Assembly: GCF_021869535.1 (NCBI RefSeq)
Contig: NW_026262659.1
Location: forward strand, 2,418,001 to 2,482,000
Origin: Mytilus californianus
Taxonomy: Eukaryota
Reading direction: 5' to 3'
DNA length: 64,000 nt
Shown here: one piece after another, positions 13,298-61,460 of the stretch
How the letters are laid out: the number at the start of each line of letters is the position of its first letter
Position numbering within the stretch: the stretch's first letter is position 1
Position numbers and translations under genes: made by a program
Notes under the pieces: model-generated
The model's input: only the letters and a program-made list of their open reading frames with translations
The model's database searches: none
Told to the model about the DNA's origin: nothing

Positions 13298-14100
13298 CTA
13301 AAAGAGGTTTACAAACAAAATTTTTTTTTTTACTTCATTATAATTCAATAATTTTCATAATTAAACTTGATAATTTTATCTCCTCAAGTCATCACCAAAT
13401 ACAAATCTATTACAAAACTTCACTAGACACAAAGCATGCTAAGGGGTACTGACAGAAGGTGCTAATATTTTATATGAAATGCCTTATCAGGACTTACCAA
13501 ATATTCTCTAGCAGTACTAAAATACCTTTCTGGATTGTTTCTTTTCTTATTCAAAGTAAATTAAAATATCACTTAACTTCATCAGGAACGATAAAAACCA
13601 AAAATAATTTAATGATCAAGGATACAATAATCTCCTTCATCATCCCACCTTATCTTTGTTTTTTCATTGTTCCTCTATAATATTGGTACAAGAGGGCCTT
13701 ACCAATCCTCAACACTATGCTTCTGCACTGTAATTATAGGTTATGTAGTGCAGTGTTGAGTTGATCTTTACCGGTACACATTCTCCAATTGGTCAGCAAT
13801 CTTGTATCTGCCACAATAGGCAACTATCTTCACTACTACACAATCTCCTTTGGTTTCAGATCATAACTTGCATTTTGCTTCATCTTTTCTGAAGTAGCTG
13901 CCATTTAATTGAAGTTGGTGGCAGATATTTGGTTGTCACTTTTTAATTTTTTTATAACTTCAGTATGATTTAGAATTTGACATAAACTGTGCACACACAA
14001 GTCTTGTTTACTGCTGAAGACTTTGCTCACATTAGATGTATTTTTGTTATGTTTTGTTGGGTTATTCTCTCATTTACACATATACCCACACCCCATTTAA

Positions 14101-16999: not shown

Positions 17000-18560
17000 C
17001 AACATAAAACACTAAAGCTCAGCAATCATAAATTAAAAGAGACTAAGAAAATAAAATACAAAAAGAGTGGAAGTATATAATAAGCAGCACTACTATGTTT
17101 CAAAGCTGTAACATAAAACATAAAAATAAATAAATAGCACATGTATTGCAATGGCATGAGTTGCCATTCCATGAGTTTATTAGACTCTTGAATTGAGTAA
17201 AAGATGTTTCAGTTCTAAAGTGGTTTGGCAACTCATTCCATGGTTTGGCTGCAAAATACCTGAATGATTTCAAGCCATACCTTGTAGTTCTAACTGCAGG
17301 CATTTCAGCTAAGTTTTGATATCTGAAATAAAATTGAGAATGGAAATTGGGAATGTGTCAAAGAGACAACAACCCGACAAAAGGGCAGAAAAAGCCTAAG
17401 GCCACCAATTGGTCTTCAACACAGCGAGAAAATCCCGCACCCAGAGGCCGGCTTCAGCCCAGGCCCCTAAACAAAATGTGTACTAGTTCAGTGAAAATGG
17501 ACGTCACACTAAACTCCAAAACGTATAAATGAACTAAAATTAAAAAACATACAAGACTAACAAAGGCCAGAGTCTCCTGACTTGGGACAGGCGCAAAAAT
17601 GTGGCAGGGTTAAAAGAATATTTTCTTTAATATGTATAAGATCATGTAGGTATAATGGATTTTCTTTATTTACTGTTCTAAATACCTCTATTGCCATGAG
17701 TCTTGGGCATCTTACTTTAAGAGATAGCATTTTTTATTTCAAAAGTACATTTTTTTTTTGTAAATCATCATATGTGTTGTTCTGAGTAATCCTTGTATAT
17801 GAAGCTAAGTGCTCTTTCTTCTATTTTTTTCAATTTTAGTAGTGTTTGCCTGGCTGCAGAAATGCAAGGATAATGAGCAGAAATTAAAGTTGGACATAAT
17901 AAGGAGTGATAAATTGTTAATTTTCCCAGTTTGTTCAAGTATTTGCCAAGTCTTTTTTTAAAGACATTAAGTTGTCTAGATGCTTTTATGCAGATGTTGG
18001 AGATATGTGTGTTAAAATTTAGTTCAAAGTCAATAGTGAGATCGATGCCTAATTATAGTTTGACCTCTTTCTCACATTTTATTTTGTTAAATGTAATGTT
18101 TTTGTCCATTGTTTTTTGGCCAATTGCCGAAGCTTGAAATTTTTCAGGGTTTGCCTTCATAAAATTGATTGGAAAAGAACCAGTCTATCAGACATGTCAG
18201 AGCCATACTGCCTTTTTCAAGTTTAGAATAAACTAATTTTGATCAAGTGCTATTTTCCAGTCCTAAATGATTCGGAGTAGAGTAGTTTGACATCCGTATT
18301 TTGGTCAAAAAGCAGATAAGTATGGGTGAAAGTGTGTATTGAAGTATTCAACTAGCTGGTTGTGAAATGTTCTTTTGAAAAATAGTGAAGTATAATAATT
18401 ACTGGTCTCTAGTTGCCTACGTACATCAAGTACATTTTTCTTTTTGTGCAATGGTACAACTTGTGCCTGTTTTTGTTGGTCTAGAAAAGCAGCTGATTTT
18501 ATAGTCTGTTTTGTTAAGTTGTTAATAAAAAAAAGCTTAATTATAATAATAAAATACATG
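17000..18560 (-). mobile_element. Decayed non-LTR retrotransposon (CR1/L2-like RT 3' half) interrupted by a dispersed repeat at ~17330-17612
   Basis: RT-like fragments AAFLDQQKQAQVVPLHKK..NY..QLVEYFNTHFHPYLSAF and the typical C-terminal VRTTRYGLKSFRYFAAKPWNELP..FKSLINSW..CHC; many stops and frameshifts. Confidence 0.75.
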
Positions 18561-41004: not shown

Positions 41005-44000
41005 TCATGTTTCATAGCCAATATCATTTTCTGCCAAAGAATCAAAGGAATTTCTATGATGATGTCTTGTTTCATATTCATGAGTATTTAAATTTTCGAT
41101 TACTGGTTGATAAGGATTCAAATATTCCTCACTTTTGTGTGAAGTATTACTGCCACTTTCGGAAAATCTTTCTCTTTGTTCATACATCACATTAATAACA
41201 TTTGTGTCATTATATTCACGGACAACTGGTTGATTCGGTTCAATGTAACCGTCATCACGGACTACCGGCTGGTGTGGTTCAAGATAACCATCTTCCAGGT
41301 CAACTATATTGTCAGATTCTGAAGAGGACTTTGAAATTCTGTTGACATTTCTCAATACCATGGGAGTATTACGCATGTTATCCTCGTCAACTCTGTCATA
41401 GTAATGTTCATCTTGTTGGTTTCGATTGTCACTATGGTTACCAACATTATACATCATACAACGATCTTTAATGCTCTCTTTATAACACAGGCACATTGTA
41501 CAAATGGTAACCACAATGACAAACGATCCACCACCAACAGTATATATGATCATTTCTCGCGGTAGTATACCTAAAATATATATAAAACTTGACAATAAGA
41601 ACAGCTACAAAAAGACAACCAAATCAGTAACTTATTGTACATATCAAACATTAGACATGAATTTCAAACCTAAGGATCTCACACTTCGTATGTTATTTTT
41701 GTATATTAACAAGAGACAGAAAAAACAATGAGACAGACATAAAACATTTTCCAGTTGATTAACGTAATAATCCATTATAGTTATAATTAATAATTAATCA
41801 GAATAATGGCCTTTGCATTATATTAACTGAGCCTGAGAATATGTACCAGTAATATAAATTTTGTATTCAGTGGCTAATTGTTGGAACCCACTTGGTGGTC
41901 TCGTGGTAGCGTGCTTGCCTTGCGTGTGTGTGGTCATAGGTTTGACCCCGATCCGGATCGATCTAAAGACTCTTAAATTGGTATTTGTTTCTTCTCCGCT
42001 ATCCATACGACACTACGGAGTAGAGAAGAGACTTGTTGGAGTTAGAATAATGATTCTGGGTAAGGTGTCATGTCTTCCTGAGATATGTTACCTGTGAACT
42101 AGCAAGCTCAGCATGTTGGTCTAGTCCAAAGCAAGGTTCAAATTGATATCACATTAACATGTTCTCGTCCTGAATTTGCATACAATTTACTGTAGTGTAA
42201 TTGCCCTGTAGTTCTAGGGGGTTTCCCCAGCCTGTCACGAGGGTACTGGTACAGCACCGAGGGACCCGAAGGGACACATGACACAAGGGTCACAGTTGGG
42301 TACTTCCAGACTCTACTTCGAGGGCAACTCTCTTTTACTGCGGAACGAGCAAGGCAAGGCGCCTGATATCTGGGACCTGACGAGGTTAGCTGGGACTGAC
42401 ACCTAGTAGGAAGGTAAGGGCACTCTTACACTAAGCATAGCTTGTATTTTCCGCTTGGGTAACCGTAGAGCCCAGCGAGACAGGCCAAATAACACTTTAC
42501 TGGTAGTTGCGGGTGGTTTTAAATTTTGGTCCTGCAGGGGCTTGGACGCCATTTTGGGCATCACTCCAAAATTTTGAGTGCCTTCGGTCAACCCTGAGAA
42601 TTGGTATTTCGTCCTAGAGAGTCATACCAGGTCCCGTGTTGTACTTTCTGGGTGAAAGTAGGGAAAATTACATCGTAATTGAATAGTTTTTGGGCCCGGG
42701 AAAACTTTTTGAAAGTTGTATAGTTTGATAGCGAGGTCACGCGAGGTTTTTGCCGCGAGATTTGGGCGTCATCTTAAATTCCTAATTACGGATGTAAACA
42801 AACACAGTGTTTTTGTGCATATTGTATAACGGTGTATACATTTTTATACTGACTTTTTTATTTTGAATAAAGATTTATTGTTGCTTTAATTACATTGAAT
42901 ATTAATTATTGCTTTGTAATTTATATTGAAATAAAGTAAAATAAATTAAATATTATAAGTCATTATGGAGAGAGGAAGAGGGTACACTATAAAGATAAAC
43001 ACCTGTCCTGAGGTGGTACTGAAGTGTATGCCTGGCATAGGGAATGCCATAGGAAACAGGATAATGAATATCAGGAACAAGGGGATCCACATTGATAGGG
43101 AGGTGTTAGAGCAAATCCCCTATCTGAGAGTAACTGAGGGTCTCCTTGGAATGATTGATTTTGAATCTAGCCCAACCAGGGAGAATGCTGGTGCAGGGCA
43201 CCCCAGTATTCCAGTAGTAGACAAGAACAGGCAGTCGACGCCTATTTTTAGCCCGTTATGTGTGGAGACACATGAGGATAGAGACGCGCCTTTGCGCAGA
43301 GAATGTTCTGACCCACCATCGGTATGTCAGAGGCATATGGCGATTCACCATATTTTAGGCCTATTCCTGCTCATCAACATGAGGAGAACAAGCAAAAGAT
43401 TGCAGAGATGTGCAATTTTGGTAATAAGGTCAGTAATTGGATTGAAGAACACCATGCTAAGAGGGACACCACACACACAGGTTCCTATAAGGTCAAACCA
43501 CACCTGAAATCGATTGAATTGCCTGATTTAAGACAAACAATCTCACCTATTGCAATGCAATCAGTCCTTGAGTCAGAAAAAGAGAAGGTGTCCGGGGAAA
43601 TAGAAAGTTTACTTGGTGACCTGGGACATCTCAGTGATGTGTCGGATAGGGATAGTCTGATACATTCCCCTCGGACCAATATGGTTGTTCAACACCAACA
43701 AGAACAACAACATTTTGCTGACAGCCTACAGCGACAACAAGTTCTAGACCTGAGTACACATAGCCATGATATCAGGCTAGTTGAGAATCAACAAGTACTT
43801 CCTGTGGCTAATTTTCAACAAATAGACCAACAGGGTATCAACAGACCTCAACCAGTCAACAAAAGCCATCAACAAGATATATTACCTGTGACGACTGATG
43901 AAATGCCAAGTAACCATGTTCTCCACTTTCCACCAAGTGTTCAACATGACAACATCTACTGTCAACAAGATCAACAGGTAGCCAGCCACCTTCAACAGGC

Positions 44001-47000
44001 TTCACCGGCATATCACAGGTCGTCAACAAGTGAAAATCCTGTAAAACAACATAGGGATATATACAAACCTGACACGCCAACAGTTGAACGTGTTCAACCA
44101 TTCCCACCGCCTATTCAACATGATGACTACCACCGTCAACCAGAATTCAACAAGCATGTACATCAGACATCTGGTATTCACAGCCCTCCACCAATTTCCA
44201 ACAAATTGGGGGAACATCAACAACCAATTCACCATGTAAGTCAACAACACGACTTCAACAAGTATCAACCGGAAAGGTTACCTTCTGATCATGTTCACTT
44301 CTCACCGAGTGCTCAGCATACAGAATCATACCTCCAACAAGGTTACAACCGTCATCAACAGGATATTTCATCCAATCATTTTCAATCAAGTACACAGGGA
44401 AAATGTCCAACAGCCTTACCTTCAACTAATCAATACCAACTTAGTATTAACAACATACAAAGCGGTGTCAACAGGGTTCAACAACCAACGGTACAATCTC
44501 AGACTTATGTACCGAGTCATCAACATGTACCCCAACATCAGATTGGTTCCACCAACCAACAGCCAAGAGTCAACAAGGTTCAACAACCGATGTTGCCAAT
44601 TCAAAAAGGTGTGCAATTGCAACAACAGGTACAAGGCCTACACCAACGGCTAGCCCAGCTTCAACTAGGGGTCAACAACTATGCACAACCTATACAACAA
44701 CAAAATCCATCTGCTGCGCCGGTTTCCTTTCCTCAACAGCAGCCGAATCAACAACAACCCGTTTATCAACAACCAGGGTACCAACCACCAAGTTTTGTAC
44801 CAAGGACCCAACCACCTATAATGATTGGTCATCCAACTTCTATGTTTCAACCTCCTAGGGTGGACCAACACCACAAGGACCAACACAGTCCTTTCACCAG
44901 CAAAACATGTGTAATGTAACGTACCCAGCCATGGGTCAGTCTACCTTTTCAAGGCCTGCAGATGCAAGTAACTATCAGCCAGAGTCACACACATCACCTA
45001 TGCAACAGCAGCAACCTTAATCATCAGGAGCACCACCAGCACATAACAACCAACCGTCGGCAAGACGAAAGGAGTACGATAGTGATTATCAGGAGAGACA
45101 GCGTAGGCGTGATCCAGGTCGTTATTATACAGCTGATTCGGACACGTCTGATGCTTCACCATACCACCAGACCAGGAATAAACGTAGGTCAGAACCTGCT
45201 TACCTCAGTGATCATTCACACAGAGACTTCTCACCTATAAGAAGTGCAAGGACCTCTCCAGCACATAGTAGACATAGTTCGAGGAGAAGCCTTACTGCTA
45301 GAGAGTCGCAATCAGAATCTGAGACAGACAGTCGACATTCGAGGAGTCAGTCAAAGAAAACCAAAAAGATTGAGAAAAGACAATTTCTGTCCTCAATTCC
45401 TAAAACGCACCGTTATAGTGGGAAAGGCAACTGGAAAGCCTTTTATACCATGTTTTCTGGTTATGCAAAAATTGCCGAGTGGACAGATGAACAAAAAAGG
45501 GAACAGCTCTGCTGGTGTCTAGATGATGCAGCCAGTGAGTATTACACCTTACTACTGGAAAACAACAAAACAGCTAGTTTTACTAATATCATATCTAATA
45601 TGAATAAGAGATTTGGTCATCAAGAACTGCCAGAAACCTCACAGGTTCAGTTCCAGACAAGTGCCCAAGGAGAAAAGGAGACCTTGGAGGAGTGGTCGGA
45701 AAGAGTGTTGACTCTCGCCACTAGAGCCTATAGCAGGTATAGTGAACAACTGATGACTGAACAGGCAATCATGAGATTTTGCCAGGGTTGCAATGATACG
45801 GTTGCTGGAACAAAAGCCTGTATCTCTAAACCTAAGTCTATGGATGCAACCTTGGACATGATAAGATGGTGTCAACACACCAGGAAGGCAGTCAGTGCCA
45901 TTCAAAAACCTGGTAAACCAGCAAATGAGTCTAGTTCAGAGAAGCCAGGTAACTCACCAGTAGTTCTTGGTGTAGGTAGCACCAAGTCCAGTATGGACAA
46001 TCGTCTCTCCCGCATAGAGGAATATATAGAGAAAATGATGTCAACAGTAACCAGTTTGGTTCAAGAACAATCAGCCACACAAGGAACCAGTACCATCTCT
46101 AGGTTACTTAACCAAGACAACAGATCTTCCAATTATTCGCCTAGACGTAATTATGGCCGAGGTCGTGGGCGGAGGAATAATTCGGGTGACAGGAGATATA
46201 CCAGACGTGGTTATTATAATAATGAATGCTTTAATTGTCACAAGCAAGGTCATTATGTCAAAGACTTCCAGACCTATATGTACAAGATACTGGAAGTCGA
46301 CAGTCAGTACAGAAAGAGCCAACATCTCAACAAGTATCTTTTAATGAGAACAAAGATGATTTTTATGAATCTGAAGGAGTAGTATCAGGAGTCAGTACAG
46401 TTAGATCACTAGGAGCAGCCAAACTCTTCAGAGTTGAAGTAGATATAGCTGAAAAGAAAGTACTTGCTCTTGTTGACTCTATCTGAAGTAACTATTCTAA
46501 AGGACACAATTTTTGACACTTTGGAGCCTAATCCCTATGTTATCAAGGAGACCACCATGTATGGTGCTGGTACCAACATGACAATGCCATGCACGCTCAC
46601 TAGTCCTATCAAGTTCAAAATTGGACATATGCAGTTCAATCAACAACTGTATGTAGCTCCAGTTTCATGTGATATGATACTTGGATGTGACTTTATCATA
46701 CAAAACAAATGTATCATGAATATTGGAGAATTACTTATCACTGTACAGAACAGGAACATGCCATTATTTCTAAGGGATAATAATACAGTTCATGAACCGA
46801 TTGTCAACGTTGTTCATGGACTGAACACTGCAGATTCATCATCTGATGAGAAAACCAGTACATAAGGGTCAACACAAAGGGCTGATTTTCATTTTGAAAC
46901 AGTCATTCCTCAAGAGTCTAACCTAGGCATGATGGCCTCGACATCTACACAGGAATCTGACGAAAGAGGAATACAGGATAAGCCTGATCAATGTAGAGAC

Positions 47001-50000
47001 AGTAGAGATCAGTGCTGTATTAACAAGGTAGAATCGAGAGAAAACCTTGGGTTTTATACTTGTCCCAAAAGTGGGGAAAGGGAGAAGACTTGTGTTCAAA
47101 GTCTTACAGACCGTAGATATCCTGTAAAGAACTGCCCAGTAGTGGTAGATAGAAGAGACGTAAAAAAACATTGTTTTGAAGAACATCTTTCTGAAATCTT
47201 TCAGACATATCATTCCAAAAGACTCATGGAGGACAGTAGATTTCACCAACATAGAGCTTATGTGGTTATGCTCATAGCAAAATGGTTAACTGGGCAGGAA
47301 ACAGTGACTGCCAAAGATTTGGTTAATTTCCTGAATGATAAGTCTTTTGTGCCACGTTCTACGCATGTTACAGGGATACAGATGCAAATTCATCGTACAG
47401 TGTGTAAAGAGATGGGGTGGACAGATTATTTCAGATATAGTTTGAGACCAGTAAACAGCCCTGCTTGTTTACTCAACTGGAGAGTCCTAACTTCACTTCT
47501 TAACTTTTTAACCCCTGAACAACAAAATATGGTAGCCGAGGGATTTAACTACAATCCTGGAAATCCTCCAGATCCTGAGGAACTTGCTGAGATGAATGCC
47601 AGTTTCTGGCCAGCGTTTGTTAATAAAACTCAAGTTGAGTCAGCAATCCTTCAAAAAGAAGGGGAGGAAGACAATGTTCAGTCTGAACAAGAAGAACGTA
47701 CCATAGTAATGGACAAAATAGAAGAAATTCACTATGAGAGTGAAAGTTCGAACACTGACACATCTAGCAAAAAGAGGAAATTGCAGTCCAATATTGCTGA
47801 CAATGACACAGATGCACACTATACTCCGGAGAATGAAACCGCAATTCTCCTGGGACGCCAAGTTTCACAACTAGTTAAATCCCAGGTAGAGCCTTCTTCT
47901 TCGCAGCTCAAGCCAATCCAGAGCCCTCAAGTTCCAATACTTGTAGTTATACAGTATGAAGGTTTGCAGTGTATCGCAAGGGTTAGTTCTATGGCAGAAC
48001 TGTACAATGTGGTTACAGAACGGTTCCCTGAAAGTGGGAATGTGTCACTGATCTGTGAAGGAACAGTCTTAGATGATAGTGTATGCTTTGACCTGTTAGG
48101 TCACCGTCCTCACATTGAGGTGAGGCGCCTTCAGTAATAAAATTGTCAAAACAGAACAGTTTTCCCAGCTTGGGATTTACCACCATTGGTATTGTGTTGA
48201 GTGTGAACCATTATTGTATTTTATGTGATTTTTATTAATTATTTACTTCACACTCTCACATGTAAAGTGTACAAATATGTTAAATAGTTGCAACCGATAT
48301 TAAGAGCGGTGTCATGATCCTGATATTATATAAATTGTAGTTATACTAACTATTACAGTAGTAAAATAGTTAAATGTATCCTTATATATAGGTACTATAT
48401 AGGTGGGATTTTAAACAAGAGTCAAATTATTTATGGTCATGTACATCCTTCCCGGTTGTAAATTATGTATTAGGGTATACATCAGACTCGGACTTCTCTT
48501 GAACTGAATTTTAATGTGCGTATTGTTATGCGTTTACTTTTCTACATTGGCTAGAGGTATAGGGGGAGGGTTGAGATCTCATAAACATGTTTAACCCCGC
48601 CGCATTTTTGCGCCTGTCCCAAGTCAGGAGCCTCTAGCCTTTGTTAGTCTTGTATTATTTTTAATTTTAGTTTCTTGTGTACAATTTGGAGTTTAGTATG
48701 GCGTTCATTATCACTGAACTAGTATATATATTTGTTTAGGGGCCAGCTGAAGGACGCCTCCGGGTGCGGGAATTTCTCGCTGCATTGAAGACCTGTTAGT
48801 GACCTTCTGCTGTTGTCTGTTCTATGGTCGGGTTGTTGTCTCTTTGACACATTCCCCATTTCCATTCTCAATTTTATTTTATTAGTTAGTTGCATTTGGA
48901 AATTCAGGGCGGTATTAATGAACTTGTCATTTAGACATTGTGATTGTTTTATATTGTACATTTATATTGTGAAGTATCATGTTTCCGTCAGTTCAGGTCT
49001 GAACAGTTGATACATATACATGCATGTGAACATTACACAGGAGTCAGGGATTTGAGACGTGTTGAGCACGCCGTTTATTGTCTTGTAGTGAGATGTTTCC
49101 AGGACTTGATAAGTTGGAATAGCATATGGCTATGGTCGACATGGAGTTCGGCTGTTATTTGTCCTGAAGAACCTGGTTAGGTTAGCACCCTGTGGCAACT
49201 CTGGTGTGTAAATTGTTGGGAGTTTGGATACTCTATAGCTAGATAGCTGTTCAGTCCTGAATTTTTATTTGTATGTTTAAGTTTACAGGGGTAATAATTT
49301 TTTTTTCTTAGGGAAAGATTAAGTTTGTCCAATTTTCCCTTTATCCAGGATTTAGGGGGGTAGATATTTTAGATACCCTGTGTCATGGTTGAGTTAGAAA
49401 AAGACGCTGCCAGTCTTCCCCTGGGGAGTTTTTGTGATAATACAGTCGTTTTTGTCGGAACTAAAGTTCCTCCTTTTTAAGATGGAGGGGGGTGTAGTGT
49501 AATTGCCCTGTAGTTCTAGGGGGTTTCCCCAGCCTGTCACGAGGGTACTGGTACAGCACCGAAGGATCCGAAGGGACACATGACACAAGGGTAACAGTTG
49601 GGTACTTCCAGACTCTACTTCGAGGGCATCTCTCTCTGACCGCGGAACGAACAAGGCAAGGCGCCTGATATCTGGGACCTGACGAGGTTAGCTGGGACTG
49701 ACACCTAGTAGGAAGGTAAGGGCACTCTAACACTAAGCATAGCTTGTATTTTCCCCTTGGGTAACCGTAGAGCCCAGCGAGACAGGCCAAATAACACTTC
49801 ATTGCCATTGGAAGTTACACATCGATCCAACATCAGCATATCGTTAGTCTCTCTTTCACACGAACTTCCTATAGCTACATCTCTTTATGTAAACTTATAT
49901 GACTTGTAATTTTCATGTCTTTTTTTGTCTAATGTGCACCAGAGACTCTTTGTGTAAGTCTTTTTATAGAGTTTTATGATTTTTGTCGAGCCTGCGACTT

Positions 50001-53000
50001 TTGTCGCAAAAGCGAGACATAGCGATCCTACATTCCGTCGGCGTCGTCGTCGTCGTCGTAGTCGTAGGCGGCGTCCACAAATATTCACTCTGTGGTTAAA
50101 GTTTTTGAAATTTTAATAACTTTCTTAAACTATCCTGCATTTCAACCAAACTTGGACAGAAGCTTGTTTATGATCATAAGATAGTATCCAGAAGTAAATT
50201 TTGTAAAAACAAAAATCCTGTTTATCCGTATTTTACTCATAAATGGACTTAGTTTTTCTGCCAGTTAACATTACATTCACTCTGTGGTGAAAGTTTTTCA
50301 AATTTTGATAACTTTCTTAAACTATTCTAGATTTGTACCAAACTTGGACAGAAGCTGGTTTATAATCAAAAGATAGTATTCAGAAGAAAATTTGGTAAAA
50401 AAAAACCCTGTTTGTCCGTTTTTTACTCACACATGGACTTAGTTTTTCTGCCAGTTAACATAACATTCACTCTGTGGTTAAAGTTTTTCAAATTTTAACA
50501 ACTTTCTTAAACTATCCTGGATTTGTACCACACTTGGACAGAAGCTTGTTTGTGATCATAAGATAGTATTCAAAAGTAAATTTTGTTAAAAAAAAATCCT
50601 GTTTATCCGTATTTTACTTATAAATGGACTTAGTTTTTCTGCCAGTTAACATTACATTCACTCTGTGGTTAAAGCTTTCAAAATTTTAATAACTTTCTTA
50701 AACTATCCTGGATTTGTACCAAACTTGGACAGAAGCTTGTTTATGATCAAAAGCTAGTATCTAGAAGGAAGTTTTTCCGTATATTACTTATAAATGGACT
50801 TATTTTTATTCCAGTTAACATTACGTACGGTCTGCAGTTAAAGTTTTTAAAACATTTATTAGATTCATAAACCTTCTTGGATTTTTACCAAACTTGAACA
50901 GAACTTCTTACAATCAAAAGACAGTATCTAGAGGAAAATTTTTAATATTTTTTCCCCATTTTTGTTGAGCCTGCGACTAACAGCAAAAGTAGGCGAGACA
51001 CTGGGTTCCGCGGAACCCTTACGAATTTTTTAACATGTACTGAACATGTCTGTTTGAACAAGAGCTTATGTAGACTTTTTTTTCTATGTACTGACTTCAT
51101 AAATAAACTGAATGTTCAACACTGCTGACTAACAGAGACATATATAACTGCACTGCTTAGAATTAAAACACACAGAACAGTAAATATTAGGTATGTCAAC
51201 GAGTACTCGAGTACCCGAGTATCGCTCGGTAGTACCGAGTATCGAATCGTTTTCCTGTTAGAATGTTGTTGTCTTCTTAAAGAAAAATGTTTTTGTTAAG
51301 ATCGCATCCCGGGAAATTGAATATTAATCAAAATTAAAATACGTTTCGAATGTTTGCGTGTAATTGTCATTTAAAATTCCCTAGAACAGATGTAAGTTAT
51401 GAACAAGAGCACATTTTCAGTGCTTACACTTTTAGCTAATCTGTATTATTCATTCCACCACCGCTGTGCCGTCAGAGCATACATTTTAATCAGCAGAACT
51501 GTTATATGCGTAACAAAGTCGAGAAGTCCCAGAAAATATTGAAAAGATAATATTTCTAAATAAGAACAAATTCGTTCCACACTATGTCAACTCTCCGAGA
51601 ATAGTTAAAGGCATCAGTAAGTTCTAATTATCACCCCTTTGTTGATCATTAAATATGTTTCTTTACGATTCCCAAATACTGTTGTTTGAGAAGTCATTTT
51701 ATATAGATGTTTATTAATTAATTGATTAGATTATTGCCAGTTTGCATAATTAGTACATGTAGTAAATGAGCTATTAATTATGGTATAAAATTCCTGGGAC
51801 TATTATCTTAACCTAGGTAATAATGTTGAATGTTTTGCGTCCATGAGACAACGTTAAATTGGTATAATTTTGTGTTTTCATTTTTGAAGATGATTTTCCG
51901 AGCGAGTACTCGAGTATCGCTCGGTAAATCCAACGAGTACTCGATTAGTAAATCCTCACCGAGTTGACATCCCTAGTAAATATCAAATGTCTATTGAACC
52001 TACTGCTTTGATCAACCTTACAGAGAATGAATACCTCCATTAAAACTGCCTTTGCTCCCCACTTGTGATGTGTTATTCTGGATAGACAAATAAACTTTTG
52101 TACTATAACTGTCAACAGTGACTCCTGGAAAATAATAACCTAACATGTATATGTGCATGATAGTAAACATATTAATACAATAATTCAATGTCTAGATTTT
52201 AATATCTATGGAGGATTGTGATTTTGAGTACTATCATTCAGCGAGAACTTTTCTTGAATTCATTATTTAAAGCAATTAAATGTATTTGGTGAAAGAAGCG
52301 CCAACAATAGTTCACCACACTTCAAGATATAATCTAAACGTCATGCTCATATGGAAAAAAACATGCCATATAGATTTATTTACCAAATCTTCTAACTCTC
52401 AATTAAATTACAAATTCTTCCGAGCCTACCCTATCCGCAACATTTACTGTTTTCAGTGTTCAATGTGAGAGGTAAGAACTTATTAAAAAAAAAGTAAAAA
52501 GGCTTCATTTGATACTTGCATCAGGATTGTTTTGAGAATTTCACCATAGTACCATTTTGTAGAGTTTTTATTGCTAATCACTAATATAATATATTATATG
52601 TTTGCAGTGTCTGTTCATCCTTTATACCTTACAAGATTAAAGCCAAAAATCCCTCATTTTAAAGAAATAATTCCCACAAGGAGCCAAGTTTCAGTCATTA
52701 TTGATATTTTTGTAGATCTTAAATTGCTGACTGATTTTGCCGATTAATTTATAGTTTTTTTCTATCTATTATAATATTCAAGTTCAAGAAAAAGATCCAT
52801 TACCGACCACAATCGTCATGTAACTCTTAACTTAAACTACATAATTCATGCATGTGCACATAGAGAATAGTCAGATCTTTACATTCTGAGCAATTATCTC
52901 TCGTCAGATGTTTTGTATCTATCATGGTTTCCAAGACCTTTAAAAATGACCTGCAATTACCCTTATGTTTTGTTTTAAGCCATAGAGGTCATGTTAGTTG

Positions 53001-59000: not shown

Positions 59001-61460
59001 CCACTGTCCCATTCTGTATGTATGTGCCTGTCCCAAGTCAGGAGCCTGTAATTCAGTGGTTGTCGTTTGATTATGTGTTACATAAAATTGAGAATGGAAA
59101 TGTGGAATGTGTCAAAGAGACAACAACCCGACCATAGAGCAGACAACAGCCGAAGGCCACCAATGGGTCTTCAATGCAGCGAGAAACTCCCGCACCCGGA
59201 GGTGTCCTTCAGCTGGCCCCTAAACAAATATGTATACTAGTTCAGTGATAATGGACGTCATACTAAACTCCAAATTATACACAAGAAACTAAAATTAAAA
59301 ATGATACAAGACTAACAAAGGCCAGAGGCTCCTGACTTGGGACAGGCGCAAAAATGCGGCGGGGTTAAACATGTTTTTTGAGATCTCAACCCTCCCCCTA
59401 TACCTCTAGCCAATGTAGAAAAACAAACGTACAACAGTACGCACAGTAAAACTATTTGTTTTTCGTTGATTTTTTGTACATAAATTAGGCCGTTAGTTTT
59501 CTCGTTTGAATTGTTTTACATTGTCATTTCGGGGCCTTTTATAGTTGACTGTACGGTGTGGGCTTTGCTCATTGTTGAAGGCCGTACGGTGACCTATAAT
59601 TGTTAATTTCTGTGTCATTTGGTCTCTTGTGGAGAGTTGTCTCATTGGCAATCATACCACATCTTTTTTATATCTATCTCAAAATTTAAACTCCAATTAA
59701 AAGGCTAAATACTATAGATACATAAAGATGTACCTAAGCTCTATTTATATGGACCGAGGACATTCATACATTACGGATATGTTCCTCTAATCTTAGCCAA
59801 AATCTCGCCTTTTTTCAAGTTTTATTTTGACACACAGAATGCATCTTATCATCGAAATTTTACTTGCGATAAGAAGCACGGCGGGTGCCAATAGTTGAGC
59901 AGGAAATGCTTACCTTTCGGATCACCTGACTTCACAGACAGTTCGGGTTGTTCAATTTGGTTTTTATGTATGATGGTTTGTGGATTTGGTTTTCTGTTCG
60001 CCTAAATCTTTAACTGTCTGTTTTTCCTTGCCAGACGTCTTAATTGGTCCTTTCACCTCTTTTTAGAAAGTGCCCGAAACAATTTTATATTGCAATTTGT
60101 AGAAAAAGTTAAGAAAGAAGAAAATAATTAAAACAATTTGTTTTTTTTTATCTGGTTTGTTTGTTTACTATTTCTAGCAAAGAGTAGCATTGGAGTAAAC
60201 AGGTGTGCACGATTACAGGCAATTGAACTTTTATCATGACGTTTGTTCAAACAGGGCCAATTTCTACACAGTTTCCCGTGCAGTATTAAAATTCACAGTA
60301 TGATAGCTTCGTTAATGTACTTTTAGTTTCTAAAAACATTATGGCGTACACACTGGGTAAATTTTGAAAGAATAGTTTAAGTGATAAAGCATGATTTGAT
60401 AGGAAGGACATCTCCAAACAACACAAAAATTAATATTTTTTTGTCTTTTAGATCCATTCATGTCGTTAAGGACTTTCTTCAATGTGCATTTTGCAGAATC
60501 ATGTGAAATTTGTTGTAATGTCTAAACGGTCTTCAACAATAGTAACTAGGGCTGAATACAATTTCAATTTTATGGATGCGTGCAAAATTATTGTTAAATC
60601 TTTAATGTCCCACGACCCAAGAAAGTCATAAAAAATGACCCCAGACGTCAAGGAAACGTTAGACTAGACTCTTCATTGATCATATTCCATGAGGTTATTT
60701 TTTACAACTTTTGGGTTTCGACCCCATCATTGAAACAAATTCAGGTGAAATCGGTCCTACCTCTTTCATTTTCGTTTTAATTTGTCTGCTTGAATTAACA
60801 GAACACCACTAGTGTATGATATTTTCACGCATGAGTACTTTGTGTAACGATAATGCCAAGTTTGCTCATAGAAGGAATTAATAACTCAGAGACATCACAT
60901 TATAACAACGGTATGTATCCCAAAATTGTCCAGGTATTGGGCATGCGATAATCTGACGATACAAAGGGGTCGTCATACTGGTGTTTTCACTTCAATATTA
61001 AGAAACATAAAGGCTGTTGACAATTCACTCAGATAAATGAATACAACGAATCAATCATAGTGCATTGTTATATTTTATGTACAATATTACATTCATGAAT
61101 TGTAATACATTGTTCACCAAGAACACTGCAGGAGATGCTTATTCTGGTGTCTCTTCATTTGATCGTGTGATGCAATCTCTACTCAGTCTCATATTGGTTT
61201 GTACCTTGATATCTGATATCTGAACTGACAAGCGTGTATGGTGCATGCGTAGCAGGATATGCTTAATTTCCCGTATTCAGGACTGCTGTTCATGTGAATC
61301 ATAATATTTCCCACATTAGCTGTTTGCACCTTGAAATATCTTTGTTTTTACATTCTTGTCTACGAAGTGCCGTTTTTGTAAATCATCTTTACCTTGTCCT
61401 GTGACATTGGTCACCGTTCACATGTAAACACATCCACCAAAATAAAATGAAAAATCTCAT
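41005..61460 (-). CDS. 288-aa type I membrane protein: signal peptide, short Cys-rich EGF-like ectodomain, TM helix, Tyr-motif-rich tail (MEGF10/Draper-like miniature); join(61460-61393,58033-57972,55457-55343,53314-53259,41570-41005)
   Basis: Five GT-AG exons (68+62+115+56+566=867 nt) splice in phase: MRFFILFWWMCLHVNG-DQCHRTRNGKMEWFCCNNHEEKNGICTECDVGY..CKPCSPGTWGRKCRGICLIDC..RCDRVVGCV..IIYTVGGGSFVIVVTICTMCLCYK..YYDRV..YLEP..YIEP..YLNPY..YET*. Confidence 0.82.
41893..42190 (+). mobile_element. tRNA-derived SINE with conserved central domain; its 3' tail is split by the LTR element
   Basis: tRNA-like head (ggtggtctcgtggtagcgtg..ggtttgacccc) and central ttaaattggtatttgtttcttctccgct. The tail seems to resume after 49801 (cattggaagttacac). 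Family assignment is by recall. Confidence 0.6.
42965..46865 (+). pseudogene. Disrupted gag-protease: N-terminal helix-hairpin-helix, long Q/H/P-rich and RS-rich region, capsid-like domain, CCHC knuckle, aspartic protease
   Basis: KINTCPEVVLKCMPGIGNAIGNRI (HhH-like); PKTHRYSGKGNWKAF..WTDEQKREQL..RFG..ETLEEWSERVLTLATRAY (gag); CFNCHKQGHYVKD; LALVDS.SEVTI..DMILGCDF. Apparent frameshifts at ~43320, ~44900, ~46266 and ~46481; TAA at 45018 and 46863. Confidence 0.82.
46929..48137 (+). CDS. Intact 402-aa orphan ORF of the LTR element: Cys/His-containing helical domain, acidic linker with KKRK, C-terminal ubiquitin-like fold (predicted by eye)
   Basis: Uninterrupted ORF in the same frame as the protease, separated from it only by TAA 46863-46865 plus 21 open codons. 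No RT/RH/IN motifs. Confidence 0.6.
   Translation: MMASTSTQESDERGIQDKPDQCRDSRDQCCINKVESRENLGFYTCPKSGEREKTCVQSLTDRRYPVKNCPVVVDRRDVKKHCFEEHLSEIFQTYHSKRLMEDSRFHQHRAYVVMLIAKWLTGQETVTAKDLVNFLNDKSFVPRSTHVTGIQMQIHRTVCKEMGWTDYFRYSLRPVNSPACLLNWRVLTSLLNFLTPEQQNMVAEGFNYNPGNPPDPEELAEMNASFWPAFVNKTQVESAILQKEGEEDNVQSEQEERTIVMDKIEEIHYESESSNTDTSSKKRKLQSNIADNDTDAHYTPENETAILLGRQVSQLVKSQVEPSSSQLKPIQSPQVPILVVIQYEGLQCIARVSSMAELYNVVTERFPESGNVSLICEGTVLDDSVCFDLLGHRPHIEVRRLQ
48460..48885 (-). repeat. Dispersed repeat (aaaattgagaatggaaat family) inserted in the 3' region of the LTR element
   Basis: Reverse complement of 17330-17612 and 59085-59450. Confidence 0.8.
49980..51030 (+). mobile_element. Helentron-associated non-autonomous element (DINE-1/pearl-like) with (GTC)n and ~190-bp internal tandem repeats
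   Basis: TTTTGT(C/T)GAGCCTGCGAC at both ends, GTC microsatellite ~50040-50065, cactctgtgg units at 50087/50279/50469/50659, 3' hairpin GGGTTCCGCGGAACCC (51003-51018) followed by a T-run. Confidence 0.75.
51188..51975. mobile_element. hAT-type MITE
   Basis: GTAAATAT|TAGGTATGTCAAC...GTTGACATCCCTA|GTAAATAT: perfect 8-bp TSD and subterminal CGAGTA repeats. Confidence 0.85.
54099..54145 (+). other. Inactivated hammerhead-like motif of a second family
   Basis: gagcgtca-CCGAAGA-gac attaatt gtc-ATAT-tgcgca-tc-tagtg: same layout as 27385-27426 but with both core strands mutated. Confidence 0.45.
54397..54610. repeat. ~210-bp near-perfect palindrome (fold-back MITE-like)
   Basis: atagagaacttttcattaaaagtaatt...aattacttttaatgaaaagttctctat, with pairing continuing to a short central loop. 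Confidence 0.8.
55631..57800. mobile_element. Non-autonomous CACTA (CMC/EnSpm-like) element with long repeat-built inverted arms
   Basis: TGA|CACTACAAAAGTC...GACTTTTGTAGTG|TGA: 3-bp TSD; arms of ~300-420 bp made of TCTYGACA / TGTCRAGA subrepeats; AT-rich non-coding centre. Confidence 0.85.
58900..59672. repeat. Nested dispersed repeats: aaaattgagaatgg family (59085-59450,+) inserted in a gatgtggtatg-family copy (-)
   Basis: The host copy resumes (tatttgtttttcgtt) right after the insert. Confidence 0.75.

What the first reader, a model, noticed from the sequence alone, without database searches (positions are those of the whole stretch)
42191..49801. LTR element whose pol is replaced in frame by an orphan domain with a ubiquitin-like tail
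Seen: LTRs, PBS-like site, PPT and TSD are all present, but there is no RT, RNase H or integrase. The 402-aa ORF is in the protease frame, separated by a single TAA (46863) and 21 open codons. Correcting four apparent frameshifts and two TAA codons gives one polyprotein of about 1,720 aa (42965-48137): HhH, Q/H/P-rich region, CA, CCHC, PR, orphan domain, Ubl-like. Known: Gypsy polyproteins are cut by their own protease, and pol-less LTR elements move in trans. Inference: this may be a dedicated non-autonomous family that makes its own capsid and protease and packages a protease-released cargo protein instead of enzymes, rather than a simple deletion derivative.
Basis: partly seen in the sequence, partly recalled or inferred. 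Interest (0 to 1): 0.82.

Follow-up and report, generated by a model that had tools for sequence, protein, structure and literature searches.

The report
Pol-deleted mussel LTR retrotransposon family
This is a decayed copy of a mussel retrotransposon family that lost its reverse transcriptase and integrase, kept capsid and protease, and fused the protease in frame to the lineage's own third gene, so it must borrow a related complete element's enzymes to copy itself.

Summary
There are two 309-bp LTRs (96.7% identical), a PBS-like site, a PPT, gag (CA, CCHC), a protease and a 402-aa ORF in the protease frame. No RT, RNase H or integrase occurs anywhere in the window.

The junction is not a one-off. 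Seven other insertions in M. coruscus, M. edulis and M. galloprovincialis share it. All seven read through it, with a sense codon where the window has TAA.

The "orphan" domain is not orphan. Complete relatives (L005 in M. coruscus; TARA scaffold L003) encode gag-PR-RT-RH-IN-PHD followed by a separate ORF3 homologous to it. The family is therefore a pol-deletion derivative that joined PR to ORF3 and then amplified.

L005 shares the LTR tips, PBS, leader, PPT and gag. The window's 5' 3.8 kb is 93% identical to L005, which points to recombination with that probable helper.

ORF3's two folded domains are under purifying selection (dN/dS 0.24 and 0.14). They are a CCHH zinc-finger/helical domain with no PDB or viral fold match, whose distant kin are mostly fused to TatD DNases, and a ubiquitin-like tail.

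The "cargo instead of enzymes" idea remains untested. The window copy itself is dead.

The parts
42187..42190 (+). 5' flank of a putative 4-bp target-site duplication (TTAC)
   Evidence: TTAC upstream and TTGC downstream (3 of 4 match). L005 has a perfect 4-bp ATAG/ATAG.
42191..42499 (+). 5' LTR (309 bp, TG...TA)
   Evidence: 96.7% identical to the 3' LTR. The first 17 nt (16/17) and last 33 nt (32/33) match the LTR tips of the autonomous L005; the interior is unalignable.
42501..42516 (+). PBS-like site (begins TGG, one base after the LTR), followed by the leader
   Evidence: identical in L001, L002 and the autonomous L005. The cognate tRNA was not identified; there is no tRNA gene in the window.
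42965..43315 (+). Start of the gag polyprotein (ATG 42965) with a weak helix-hairpin-helix-like N-terminal region; frame break near 43316
   Evidence: Pfam HHH_3 E=1.4e-3, below cutoff. No PDB sequence match. Homologous to the start of the continuous 1856-aa ORF of L005.
43312..44916 (+). Q/H/P-rich low-complexity part of gag; frame break near 44858 and TAA at 45018
   Evidence: Continuous with the flanking parts in L005. 92-98% nucleotide identity to L005.
45021..46255 (+). Capsid (Retrotrans_gag/PNMA-like) and CCHC zinc knuckle; the frame breaks inside the knuckle
   Evidence: Pfam 3e-7 and 9e-7. 45% identity, E=1e-92, to the polyprotein of L003. dN/dS 0.20 among copies.
46307..46862 (+). 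Aspartic protease, split by a frame break at 46480 inside the D-S-G catalytic motif
   Evidence: 45% identity, E=8e-33, to the L003 protease. Pfam RVP in intact relatives. dN/dS 0.47.
46863..46865 (+). TAA stop private to this copy, at the PR-to-ORF3 junction
   Evidence: All seven other copies have a sense codon here and read through.
46866..47045 (+). Junction and disordered N-terminal part of ORF3 (conserved ATG at 46929)
   Evidence: collinear in eight copies, and every indel is a multiple of three (30, 21, 12, 9, 3). dN/dS about 0.64. pLDDT below 55.
47046..47615 (+). ORF3 core: CCHH zinc finger plus an eight-helix domain. In this copy the first zinc-ligand position (47118-47120) is Tyr
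   Evidence: AF2 pLDDT 92.7, pTM 0.87. No PDB or BFVD fold match. 129 sequence homologues. C, C, H, H invariant or nearly so. dN/dS 0.24. Tyr seen against Cys.
47616..47933 (+). Acidic disordered linker of ORF3
   Evidence: pLDDT below 50. dN/dS 0.56.
47934..48137 (+). Ubiquitin-like beta-grasp tail of ORF3 and its stop codon
   Evidence: pLDDT about 90. Foldseek matches to ubiquitin, SUMO and ISG15, TM 0.6-0.74. Weak CIDE-N sequence hits. dN/dS 0.14.
48138..49478 (+). 3' untranslated region, conserved among family copies
   Evidence: 80-93% identity to other copies. No pol remnant.
48458..48881 (.). Nested 424-bp interspersed repeat, present only in this copy of the element
   Evidence: Skipped in alignments to all other copies. 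Two further copies lie in the window in inverted orientation, at 59082-59451 and 17326-17614.
49479..49492 (+). Polypurine tract
   Evidence: Identical in L005 except for one fewer G.
49493..49801 (+). 3' LTR
49802..49805 (+). 3' flank of the putative target-site duplication (TTGC)

Best explanation
Window 42191-49801 is a dead copy of a non-autonomous Ty3/gypsy-like LTR retrotransposon family of Mytilus.

Origin. The parent lineage encodes one long gag-PR-RT-RNase H-IN-PHD polyprotein and a separate downstream ORF3. ORF3 consists of a zinc-finger/helical domain, a disordered linker and a ubiquitin-like tail. One internal deletion removed RT to PHD and joined the end of the protease in frame to the 5' end of ORF3. 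The active form of the family therefore encodes a single gag-PR-ORF3 polyprotein of about 1,700 aa.

Shown here: the family then transposed repeatedly in at least three mussel species.

Inferred: it uses reverse transcriptase and integrase supplied in trans by complete elements of the L005 type. It shares with them the integrase-recognised LTR tips, the PBS, the leader, the PPT and a closely similar gag. The window/L006 subfamily has exchanged its whole 5' 3.8 kb with that lineage, as expected from template switching between co-packaged RNAs.

Shown here: the family's own capsid and ORF3 domains are kept by purifying selection, so they matter for its spread.

Inferred, with low certainty: ORF3 is made at gag stoichiometry, enters particles as the tail of the polyprotein and is released by the protease. 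Its activity is unknown; the zinc finger suggests nucleic-acid binding and the beta-grasp tail suggests partner binding.
For: Anatomy.

No pol anywhere in the window.

Same junction at eight independent loci with their own LTR pairs (86.7-98.4% identical, the lowest over a partial LTR in L009) and no shared flanks.

Open frame through the junction in all seven other copies:
- L007 has an 854-codon open frame running from CA to the end of ORF3.
- L002 8001-9545 is one ORF, identical to P0001.

Every junction indel is a multiple of three.

Complete relatives with ORF3 after pol:
- L003: Pfam PNMA, CCHC, RVP, RVT_1, RNase H, rve and PHD, followed by P0027.
- L005: LTRs 98.4% identical, 10,991 bp, a continuous 1856-aa ORF, and ORF3 in another frame about 40 nt after the pol stop.

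Homology of the window to these relatives:
- gag 45% identity, E=1e-92.
- PR 45% identity, E=8e-33.
- ORF3 29% identity over 418 residues, E=5e-47.

Shared cis signals, and 93% identity over 3813 bp with L005 that stops at the PR start.

Selection (dN/dS): CA-NC 0.20, ORF3 core 0.24, Ubl 0.14, PR 0.47. For the two ORF3 folded domains together, binomial p ranges from 0.03 to 6e-11.

L005-type protease is also present in M. edulis (P0168? / P0169 are the M. edulis hits at 48-49% identity).
Against: - None of the eight copies examined is fully intact, so current activity is unproven.
- The true parent, a pol-bearing element with this family's own PR and ORF3 (at least 60% identical), was not found. 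L005's PR and ORF3 are only about 48% and 35-40% identical, so the breakpoints are placed only approximately.
- Helper identity rests on shared cis signals and a recombinant structure, not on an assay. The direction of the 5' exchange is ambiguous.
- Pairwise dN/dS mixes lineage evolution with post-insertion decay. It could be lowered by recombination with an unseen selected parent.
- With only about 21 codons between PR and the ORF3 ATG, an open in-frame join could arise by chance (roughly 10%). ORF3 might instead be translated from its own conserved ATG.
- No transcript or protein data were available.
Confidence: 0.78

Rival explanations
1. One reading: a dedicated family that replaced pol with an orphan cargo protein, which it packages and releases with its own protease. 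On this view it is not a deletion derivative.
For: - The in-frame junction is conserved in eight copies, and junction indels are all multiples of three.
- The ORF's folded domains are under selection as strong as on capsid.
- The protease is retained with a D-S-G motif in other copies.
Against: - The protein is the lineage's ordinary ORF3 and is present after pol in the complete relatives L003 and L005. Nothing was swapped in; pol was deleted.
- It is not orphan: it has 129 homologues.
- Packaging and cleavage are untested.
- The protease is the least constrained coding part (dN/dS 0.47).
Confidence: 0.25
2. A one-off deletion in this single copy, of no wider meaning.
For: Relatives do carry RT-RH-IN between the protease and ORF3.
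Against: - Seven further loci in three species have the identical junction, their own LTR pairs and unrelated flanks.
- Annotated proteins carrying X lie on 20 different contigs.
Confidence: 0.02
3. A domesticated host gene of the PEG10 or PNMA kind (gag-protease plus an added domain), no longer a mobile element.
For: - The capsid matches the Pfam PNMA and Retrotrans_gag families.
- Coding domains are under purifying selection.
- Fragments appear inside RefSeq gene models.
Against: - It has LTRs, a PBS, a PPT and a TSD.
- There are many dispersed copies at non-homologous sites.
- Every copy examined carries frameshifts or stops somewhere.
- LTR pairs are up to 98% identical, which implies recent insertions.
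Confidence: 0.03
4. The low dN/dS is imported rather than selected in this family. On this view, copies are repeatedly refreshed by recombination with an unseen autonomous parent that has the same PR and ORF3, and the non-autonomous family's proteins have no role.
For: - Recombination is evident. The window and L006 carry an L005-type 5' half.
- Window and L006 differ at dS 0.24 in gag but only 0.04 in ORF3.
Against: - No RT-bearing protein with at least 60% PR identity was found in a length-permissive search.
- All copies keep the same deletion junction, so exchange would have to spare it each time.
Confidence: 0.12

Closest known systems
Partly coding non-autonomous LTR retrotransposons (plant TR-GAG elements, BARE2 with BARE1, Dasheng with RIRE2)
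   Same: - LTR-bounded and lacking RT and IN.
- Keep gag.
- Share PBS, PPT, LTR tips and gag similarity with an autonomous partner, and recombine with it.
- TR-GAG is described in papers found (for example PMC8704663). BARE2 and Dasheng are from my own knowledge.
   Different: - This one is in an animal.
- It also keeps the protease and an accessory ORF3, fused into one reading frame with gag-PR.
- Its LTR interior is unrelated to the partner's.
Ty3/gypsy (Metaviridae) elements with a third ORF after pol (insect errantiviruses with env; plant Athila/Tat)
   Same: The parent lineage (L003, L005) has gag-pol plus a separate downstream ORF in the env position.
   Different: - ORF3 here is not an envelope protein. 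No Pfam env match was found, and the model is a soluble zinc-finger/helical domain plus a ubiquitin-like tail.
- Its integrase ends in a PHD finger.
PEG10 and PNMA domesticated gag-protease genes
   Same: PNMA-like capsid, a CCHC knuckle and a protease without RT.
   Different: Those are single-copy, LTR-less host genes. This is a multi-copy mobile family with LTRs, and its copies are decaying.
CIDE-N domains of CAD/ICAD and Drosophila DREP proteins
   Same: - The tail is a beta-grasp of about 70 residues at a protein end.
- The best, though weak, sequence hits are CIDE-N.
- Relatives of the core domain are fused to a DNase (TatD), much as CIDE-N is fused to the CAD nuclease.
   Different: - No hit reaches a curated threshold.
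- A tail-only profile found nothing in the PDB.
- Foldseek ranks ubiquitin and SUMO first.
Retroviral accessory enzymes carried in the gag-pro frame (for example betaretroviral dUTPase; own knowledge)
   Same: A non-structural domain is translated as part of the gag-protease polyprotein and so enters particles.
   Different: There the element is autonomous and the domain is a known enzyme. Here pol is absent and the domain's activity is unknown.

Membership tests
LTR retrotransposon, Ty3/gypsy-like (Metaviridae) | Two direct long terminal repeats bounding the element | tested here: met
   309-bp LTRs, 96.7% identical.
LTR retrotransposon, Ty3/gypsy-like (Metaviridae) | PBS next to the 5' LTR and PPT next to the 3' LTR | tested here: met
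   TGG... at 42501-42516 and a purine run at 49479-49492, both conserved in all copies and in L005. The tRNA was not identified.
LTR retrotransposon, Ty3/gypsy-like (Metaviridae) | Target-site duplication of 4-6 bp | tested here: inconclusive
   TTAC against TTGC in the window (3 of 4). Perfect ATAG in L005. TATA in L001, but inside a TA repeat. Not evident in L002.
LTR retrotransposon, Ty3/gypsy-like (Metaviridae) | gag with capsid and zinc knuckle, plus an aspartic protease | tested here: met
   Pfam Retrotrans_gag and PNMA above cutoff. CCHC and RVP clear in relatives. 45% identity to the gag and PR of L003.
LTR retrotransposon, Ty3/gypsy-like (Metaviridae) | pol in the order RT, RNase H, integrase | tested here: not met
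   Absent from the window and from all seven sister copies. Present in that order in the relatives L003 and L005. The window element is a derivative of the group, not a complete member.
Non-autonomous LTR retrotransposon family | Several independent insertions sharing the same internal deletion | tested here: met
   Eight loci in three species with the same junction, their own LTR pairs and unrelated flanks.
Non-autonomous LTR retrotransposon family | An autonomous partner in the same genome with matching LTR tips, PBS and PPT | tested here: met
   L005 in M. coruscus. L005-type protease is also found in M. edulis proteins. Mobilisation itself was not assayed.
TR-GAG (terminal repeats with gag only) | gag is the only coding domain | tested here: not met
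   The protease and a selected ORF3 are also encoded.
Ubiquitin-like beta-grasp fold (tail) | Beta-grasp topology with structural matches to ubiquitin-family domains | tested here: met
   pLDDT about 90. Foldseek TM 0.6-0.74 to ubiquitin, SUMO and ISG15, E from 2e-3 upward.
CIDE-N domain (Pfam PF02017) | Sequence match above the Pfam gathering score | tested here: not met
   The window tail has no hit. Homologue P0028 scores 16.5 bits against a cutoff of 23.5. PDB CIDE-N hits have E 0.19-0.93. A tail-only profile found none.
Helix-hairpin-helix domain (Pfam HHH_3) | Sequence match above the Pfam gathering score | tested here: not met
   19.1 bits against a cutoff of 27. No PDB sequence match.
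Zinc finger with C-C-H-H ligands (ORF3 core) | Four conserved zinc ligands with finger-like spacing | tested here: met
   Both His are invariant and both Cys at least 90% conserved across 58 distant homologues. The window copy has Tyr at the first Cys position. Metal binding was not tested.
Domesticated gag-protease host gene (PEG10/PNMA type) | Single syntenic, LTR-less, intact gene | tested here: not met
   LTR-flanked, multi-copy, and every copy is disrupted somewhere.

The most novel reading that the evidence does not exclude
ORF3 may be a retroelement counter-measure or regulator built from the same zinc-finger/helical domain that forms the N-terminal part of a large family of TatD-type DNases in marine invertebrates. 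In this family it is delivered at capsid stoichiometry as the tail of gag-PR. It could engage or decoy those nucleases, or their targets, much as ICAD holds CAD through a shared beta-grasp domain. That would protect newly made cDNA.

The evidence does not exclude this. The domain tree splits cleanly into a nuclease-free ORF3-type clade and a TatD-fused clade. ORF3 is under strong selection even in elements that have lost their enzymes.
Probability: 0.12. Interest if true: 0.8.

Novelty: new variant of a known kind. Interest (0 to 1): 0.5.

Why it matters
Non-autonomous LTR elements that keep part of their coding capacity are well documented in plants and poorly documented in animals.

This case comes with several things in hand. 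The deletion junction is fixed in a family across three mussel species. A candidate helper has matched cis signals and shows a recombination footprint. And there is evidence that the parasite's own capsid and accessory protein are still selected.

It also defines a gypsy-like lineage with an unusual gene set: a long N-terminal gag extension, an integrase ending in a PHD finger, and a non-envelope ORF3.

Finally, it assigns a first genomic context to a confidently folding domain that has no structural relative in the PDB or in the viral structure library, and that is otherwise found fused to TatD nucleases.

For genome annotation, it explains a set of Mytilus 'uncharacterized protein' and chimeric gene models.

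Tried and rejected
- Pfam on the 402-aa ORF and on 77 core segments gave nothing above threshold, only weak DUF4729 and CIDE-N.
- A profile of ORF3 against PDB sequences gave only sub-threshold CIDE-N and C2H2 hits. A tail-only profile gave none.
- Foldseek of the core domain against the PDB and BFVD gave best E values of about 1.3. No AlphaFold DB library was available.
- I searched for the family's true pol-bearing parent through its protease, with a query length that admits proteins up to 1806 aa. Hits at 63% identity or more all lacked RT. The search instead surfaced the L005-type lineage at about 48%.
- The Troyka superfamily (PMC12440569) was rejected. It has CG...CG termini and 3-bp TSDs, against TG...(C/T)A termini and 4 bp here.
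- Literature searches for CIDE-N with retrotransposon, for DUF4729, and for TatD with bivalve found nothing relevant.
- The direction of domain capture (host to element, or the reverse) could not be decided, because the domain tree is unrooted.
- The PBS tRNA was not identified; there is no tRNA gene in the window.
Copies were compared only by projecting them onto window coordinates.

Full report
**1. What is in the window**

- Direct repeats of 309 bp lie at 42191-42499 and 49493-49801, 96.7% identical (ends read).
- One base after the 5' LTR there is a TGG-initiated PBS-like site (42501-42516).
- A purine tract (49479-49492) lies immediately before the 3' LTR.
- The 4-bp flanks are TTAC and TTGC, so the target-site duplication is plausible but imperfect.
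- Between the LTRs the + strand carries a chain of open segments in changing frames:

| Segment | Frame | Content |
|---|---|---|
| 42959-43504 | 2 | gag N-terminal region |
| 43312-44916 | 1 | Q/H/P-rich region |
| 45021-46379 | 0 | capsid and zinc knuckle |
| 46235-46483 | 2 | protease, first part |
| 46449-46862 | 0 | protease, rest |
| 46863-46865 | 0 | TAA |
| 46866-48134 | 0 | ORF3 (ATG at 46929 gives the 402-aa ORF) |

- Pfam recognises the capsid (Retrotrans_gag 3e-7, PNMA 9e-7). It sees the protease and the knuckle only weakly and finds nothing in the 402-aa ORF.
- The helix-hairpin-helix call is weak: 19 bits against a cutoff of 27, with no PDB sequence match.
- tblastn with the 2354-aa polyprotein of a complete relative finds only its gag-PR part (residues 414-1087) at 44973-46814. 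Nothing from RT, RNase H, integrase or PHD appears anywhere in the 64 kb.

**2. The junction is a family feature**

- The 402-aa ORF has about 20 close protein hits, on 20 different contigs of M. edulis, M. galloprovincialis and M. coruscus. Several of these read from the protease straight into the ORF.
- I fetched seven genomic loci: L001, L002, L006, L007, L008, L009 and L010.
- All seven are collinear with the window across 46800-47000 and have no RT.
- Their flanks are unrelated to the window's, and most have their own LTR pairs. Pair identity is 86.7-98.4%, the lowest value coming from a partial LTR in L009.
- Projected onto window coordinates, all seven have a sense codon where the window has TAA.
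- The frame is open through the junction in every one of them. L007 has an 854-codon open frame from the capsid to the end of the ORF. L002 8001-9545 is one ORF equal to P0001.
- Every indel in the junction is a multiple of three: 30, 21, 12, 9 and 3.
- No copy is intact over its whole length.

**3. The domain is not orphan and did not replace pol**

- A full HMMER scan of 1.84 billion representative proteins found 129 homologues of the central approximately 190 residues.
- Two of them, P0027 and P0028, share the entire architecture, including the tail.
- P0027 sits on TARA scaffold L003 directly after a 2354-aa ORF. That ORF has PNMA-like capsid, CCHC, RVP, RVT_1, RNase H, rve and a C-terminal PHD finger.
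- The window's gag and protease are each 45% identical to that ORF (E=1e-92 and 8e-33).
- In M. coruscus, locus L005 holds a 10,991-bp element with these features:
  - LTRs 98.4% identical.
  - A continuous 1856-aa ORF that begins with the same N-terminal region as the window, followed by RT, RNase H, IN and PHD. The IN region is split across frames.
  - A separate ORF3 that starts about 40 nt after the pol stop, in another frame.
- The 'orphan domain' is therefore this lineage's normal third ORF. The window's family arose by an internal deletion from just after the protease into, or just before, the 5' end of ORF3.
- The breakpoints can only be bracketed to about 46815-47033. The family's own pol-bearing parent was not found. 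L005's PR and ORF3 are only about 48% and 35-40% identical.

**4. A likely helper, and recombination with it**

- Window 42464-46255 covers the last 35 bp of U5, the PBS, the leader and all of gag up to the knuckle. It is 93% identical to L005 over 3813 bp. Similarity then stops abruptly at the start of the protease.
- Over 42600-45390 the window and L006 are 92-98% identical to L005. They are only 70-83% identical to the other five family copies.
- All copies are 84-96% identical to L005 in the capsid region.
- The LTR interiors are unalignable, but the tips match: 16 of the first 17 nt and 32 of the last 33 nt. The PBS, leader and PPT are essentially identical.
- This is the classic signature of a non-autonomous element matched to the RT and IN of an autonomous partner. 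It also indicates template switching between co-packaged RNAs.
- The direction of the exchange cannot be told from these data.
- L005-type proteases also occur among M. edulis proteins.

**5. Selection**

Nei-Gojobori dN/dS over all pairs of the eight copies (median values):

| Segment | dN/dS |
|---|---|
| Capsid-NC | 0.20 |
| Protease | 0.47 |
| Junction | 0.64 |
| ORF3 core | 0.24 |
| ORF3 linker | 0.56 |
| Ubiquitin-like tail | 0.14 |

- For the two folded ORF3 domains together, nonsynonymous differences are depleted in every pair tested, with p from 0.03 to 6e-11.
- The accessory protein has therefore been as constrained as the capsid within this pol-less family.
- Caveats: pairwise values mix active-lineage change with post-insertion decay, and recombination is evident. 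Window and L006 differ at dS 0.24 in gag but only 0.04 in ORF3.

**6. What ORF3 is**

- AlphaFold2 with 65-77 homologues gives a confident core (pLDDT 92.7, pTM 0.87). It has four short strands carrying the zinc ligands, followed by about eight helices. A disordered acidic linker and a confident beta-grasp tail come after it.
- The tail matches ubiquitin, SUMO and ISG15 structures with TM 0.6-0.74.
- The only sequence hints for the tail are sub-threshold CIDE-N matches. A tail-only profile found nothing.
- The core has no fold match in the PDB or BFVD; the best E value is about 1.3.
- Across 58 long distant homologues, the two His are invariant and the two Cys at least 90% conserved. Thirty-five of the 58 carry a C-terminal TatD DNase domain and none carries RT.
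- One contig (L011) has such genes in tandem.
- A tree of the domain separates a nuclease-free clade from a TatD-fused clade, with SH-aLRT 99 on both sides. The nuclease-free clade holds every ORF3 with a confirmed retroelement context, plus rows whose context is unknown. The tree is unrooted, so the direction of capture is open.
- In the window copy the first zinc-ligand position is Tyr (47118-47120). The 'intact' 402-aa ORF is therefore probably inactive here.

**7. State of this copy**

- Read against L005 and the sister copies, there are frame breaks near 43316 and 44858, inside the zinc knuckle (about 46245-46307) and inside the protease D-S-G motif (46480).
- There are stop codons at 45018 and 46863.
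- A 424-bp interspersed repeat is nested at 48458-48881.
- The LTRs differ at about 3% of positions. This is an old, dead insertion.

**8. Mechanism**

Shown:
- The structure of the element.
- Its family status.
- Its descent by pol deletion from an ORF3-bearing lineage.
- The cis signals shared with L005.
- The recombinant 5' half.
- Selection on gag and ORF3.
- Preservation of the reading frame across the junction.

Inferred:
- Trans-mobilisation by L005-type RT and IN.
- Translation as a single gag-PR-ORF3 polyprotein.
- Entry of ORF3 into particles and its release by the protease.

Unknown:
- The biochemical role of ORF3.

**9. Verdict**

- This is a new variant of a known kind: a partly coding non-autonomous LTR retrotransposon. 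Its closest concepts are plant TR-GAG and BARE2-type elements (and own knowledge).
- It is unusual in being an animal element, in retaining the protease, and in having the lineage's accessory ORF fused in frame and kept under selection.
- I found no description of this family or of its ORF3 domain in the searchable literature.
The run of N in L009 was left as it is.

Noticed in passing
window 48458-48881; also 59082-59451 and 17326-17614 (inverted): A short interspersed repeat of about 420 bp is nested in this copy's 3' region and is absent from all other copies of the element. Copies of it also lie near or inside other family loci (L007, L010, L002). It may be a SINE or a MITE.
   Followed up: partly
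window 50015-50903: A tandem satellite of about 190-bp units starts about 210 bp after the 3' LTR. The same satellite (80-84% identical) lies just upstream of the ORF3-like gene P0026 on metagenome contig L004, which suggests that contig is mussel DNA.
   Followed up: partly
L003 residues 2293-2337 of the polyprotein; L005 about 13480-13606: The integrase of the complete relatives ends in a PHD finger (Pfam 2e-8). This is an unusual C-terminal module for an animal gypsy-like element and may serve chromatin targeting.
   Followed up: no
L005 6001-9290 and window 42965-45020: Gag in this lineage has an N-terminal extension of about 700 residues: a weak HhH-like region plus a very long Q/H/P-rich tract. 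In L005 it is translated as one ORF with the capsid.
   Followed up: partly
L008 6048-19423: This M. coruscus copy carries a nested, unrelated gypsy-like insertion (RT and IN about 30% identical to L003). It is followed by a further partial internal region and a third LTR, forming a tandem LTR-internal-LTR-internal-LTR array.
   Followed up: no
L011 1573-4041, 7453-9954 and 12886 onward: Three tandem, apparently intronless genes pair the ORF3-core-like domain with a TatD DNase. Thirty-five of 58 long homologues have this fusion. It is an undescribed nuclease family in marine invertebrates.
   Followed up: partly
Proteins P0014, P0018, P0020 and P0085: Fragments of the element's ORF3 are embedded in annotated Mytilus gene models named actin, DZIP3-like HEPN, mucin-2-like and an EF-hand protein. 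These are probably chimeric predictions caused by the repeat.
   Followed up: no
window 41005-41595 (- strand): A 196-aa ORF just upstream of the element has a hydrophobic N-terminal stretch and repeated 'GY(L/I)EP(H/N)QPVVR' motifs. It may be an exon of a host membrane protein.
   Followed up: no
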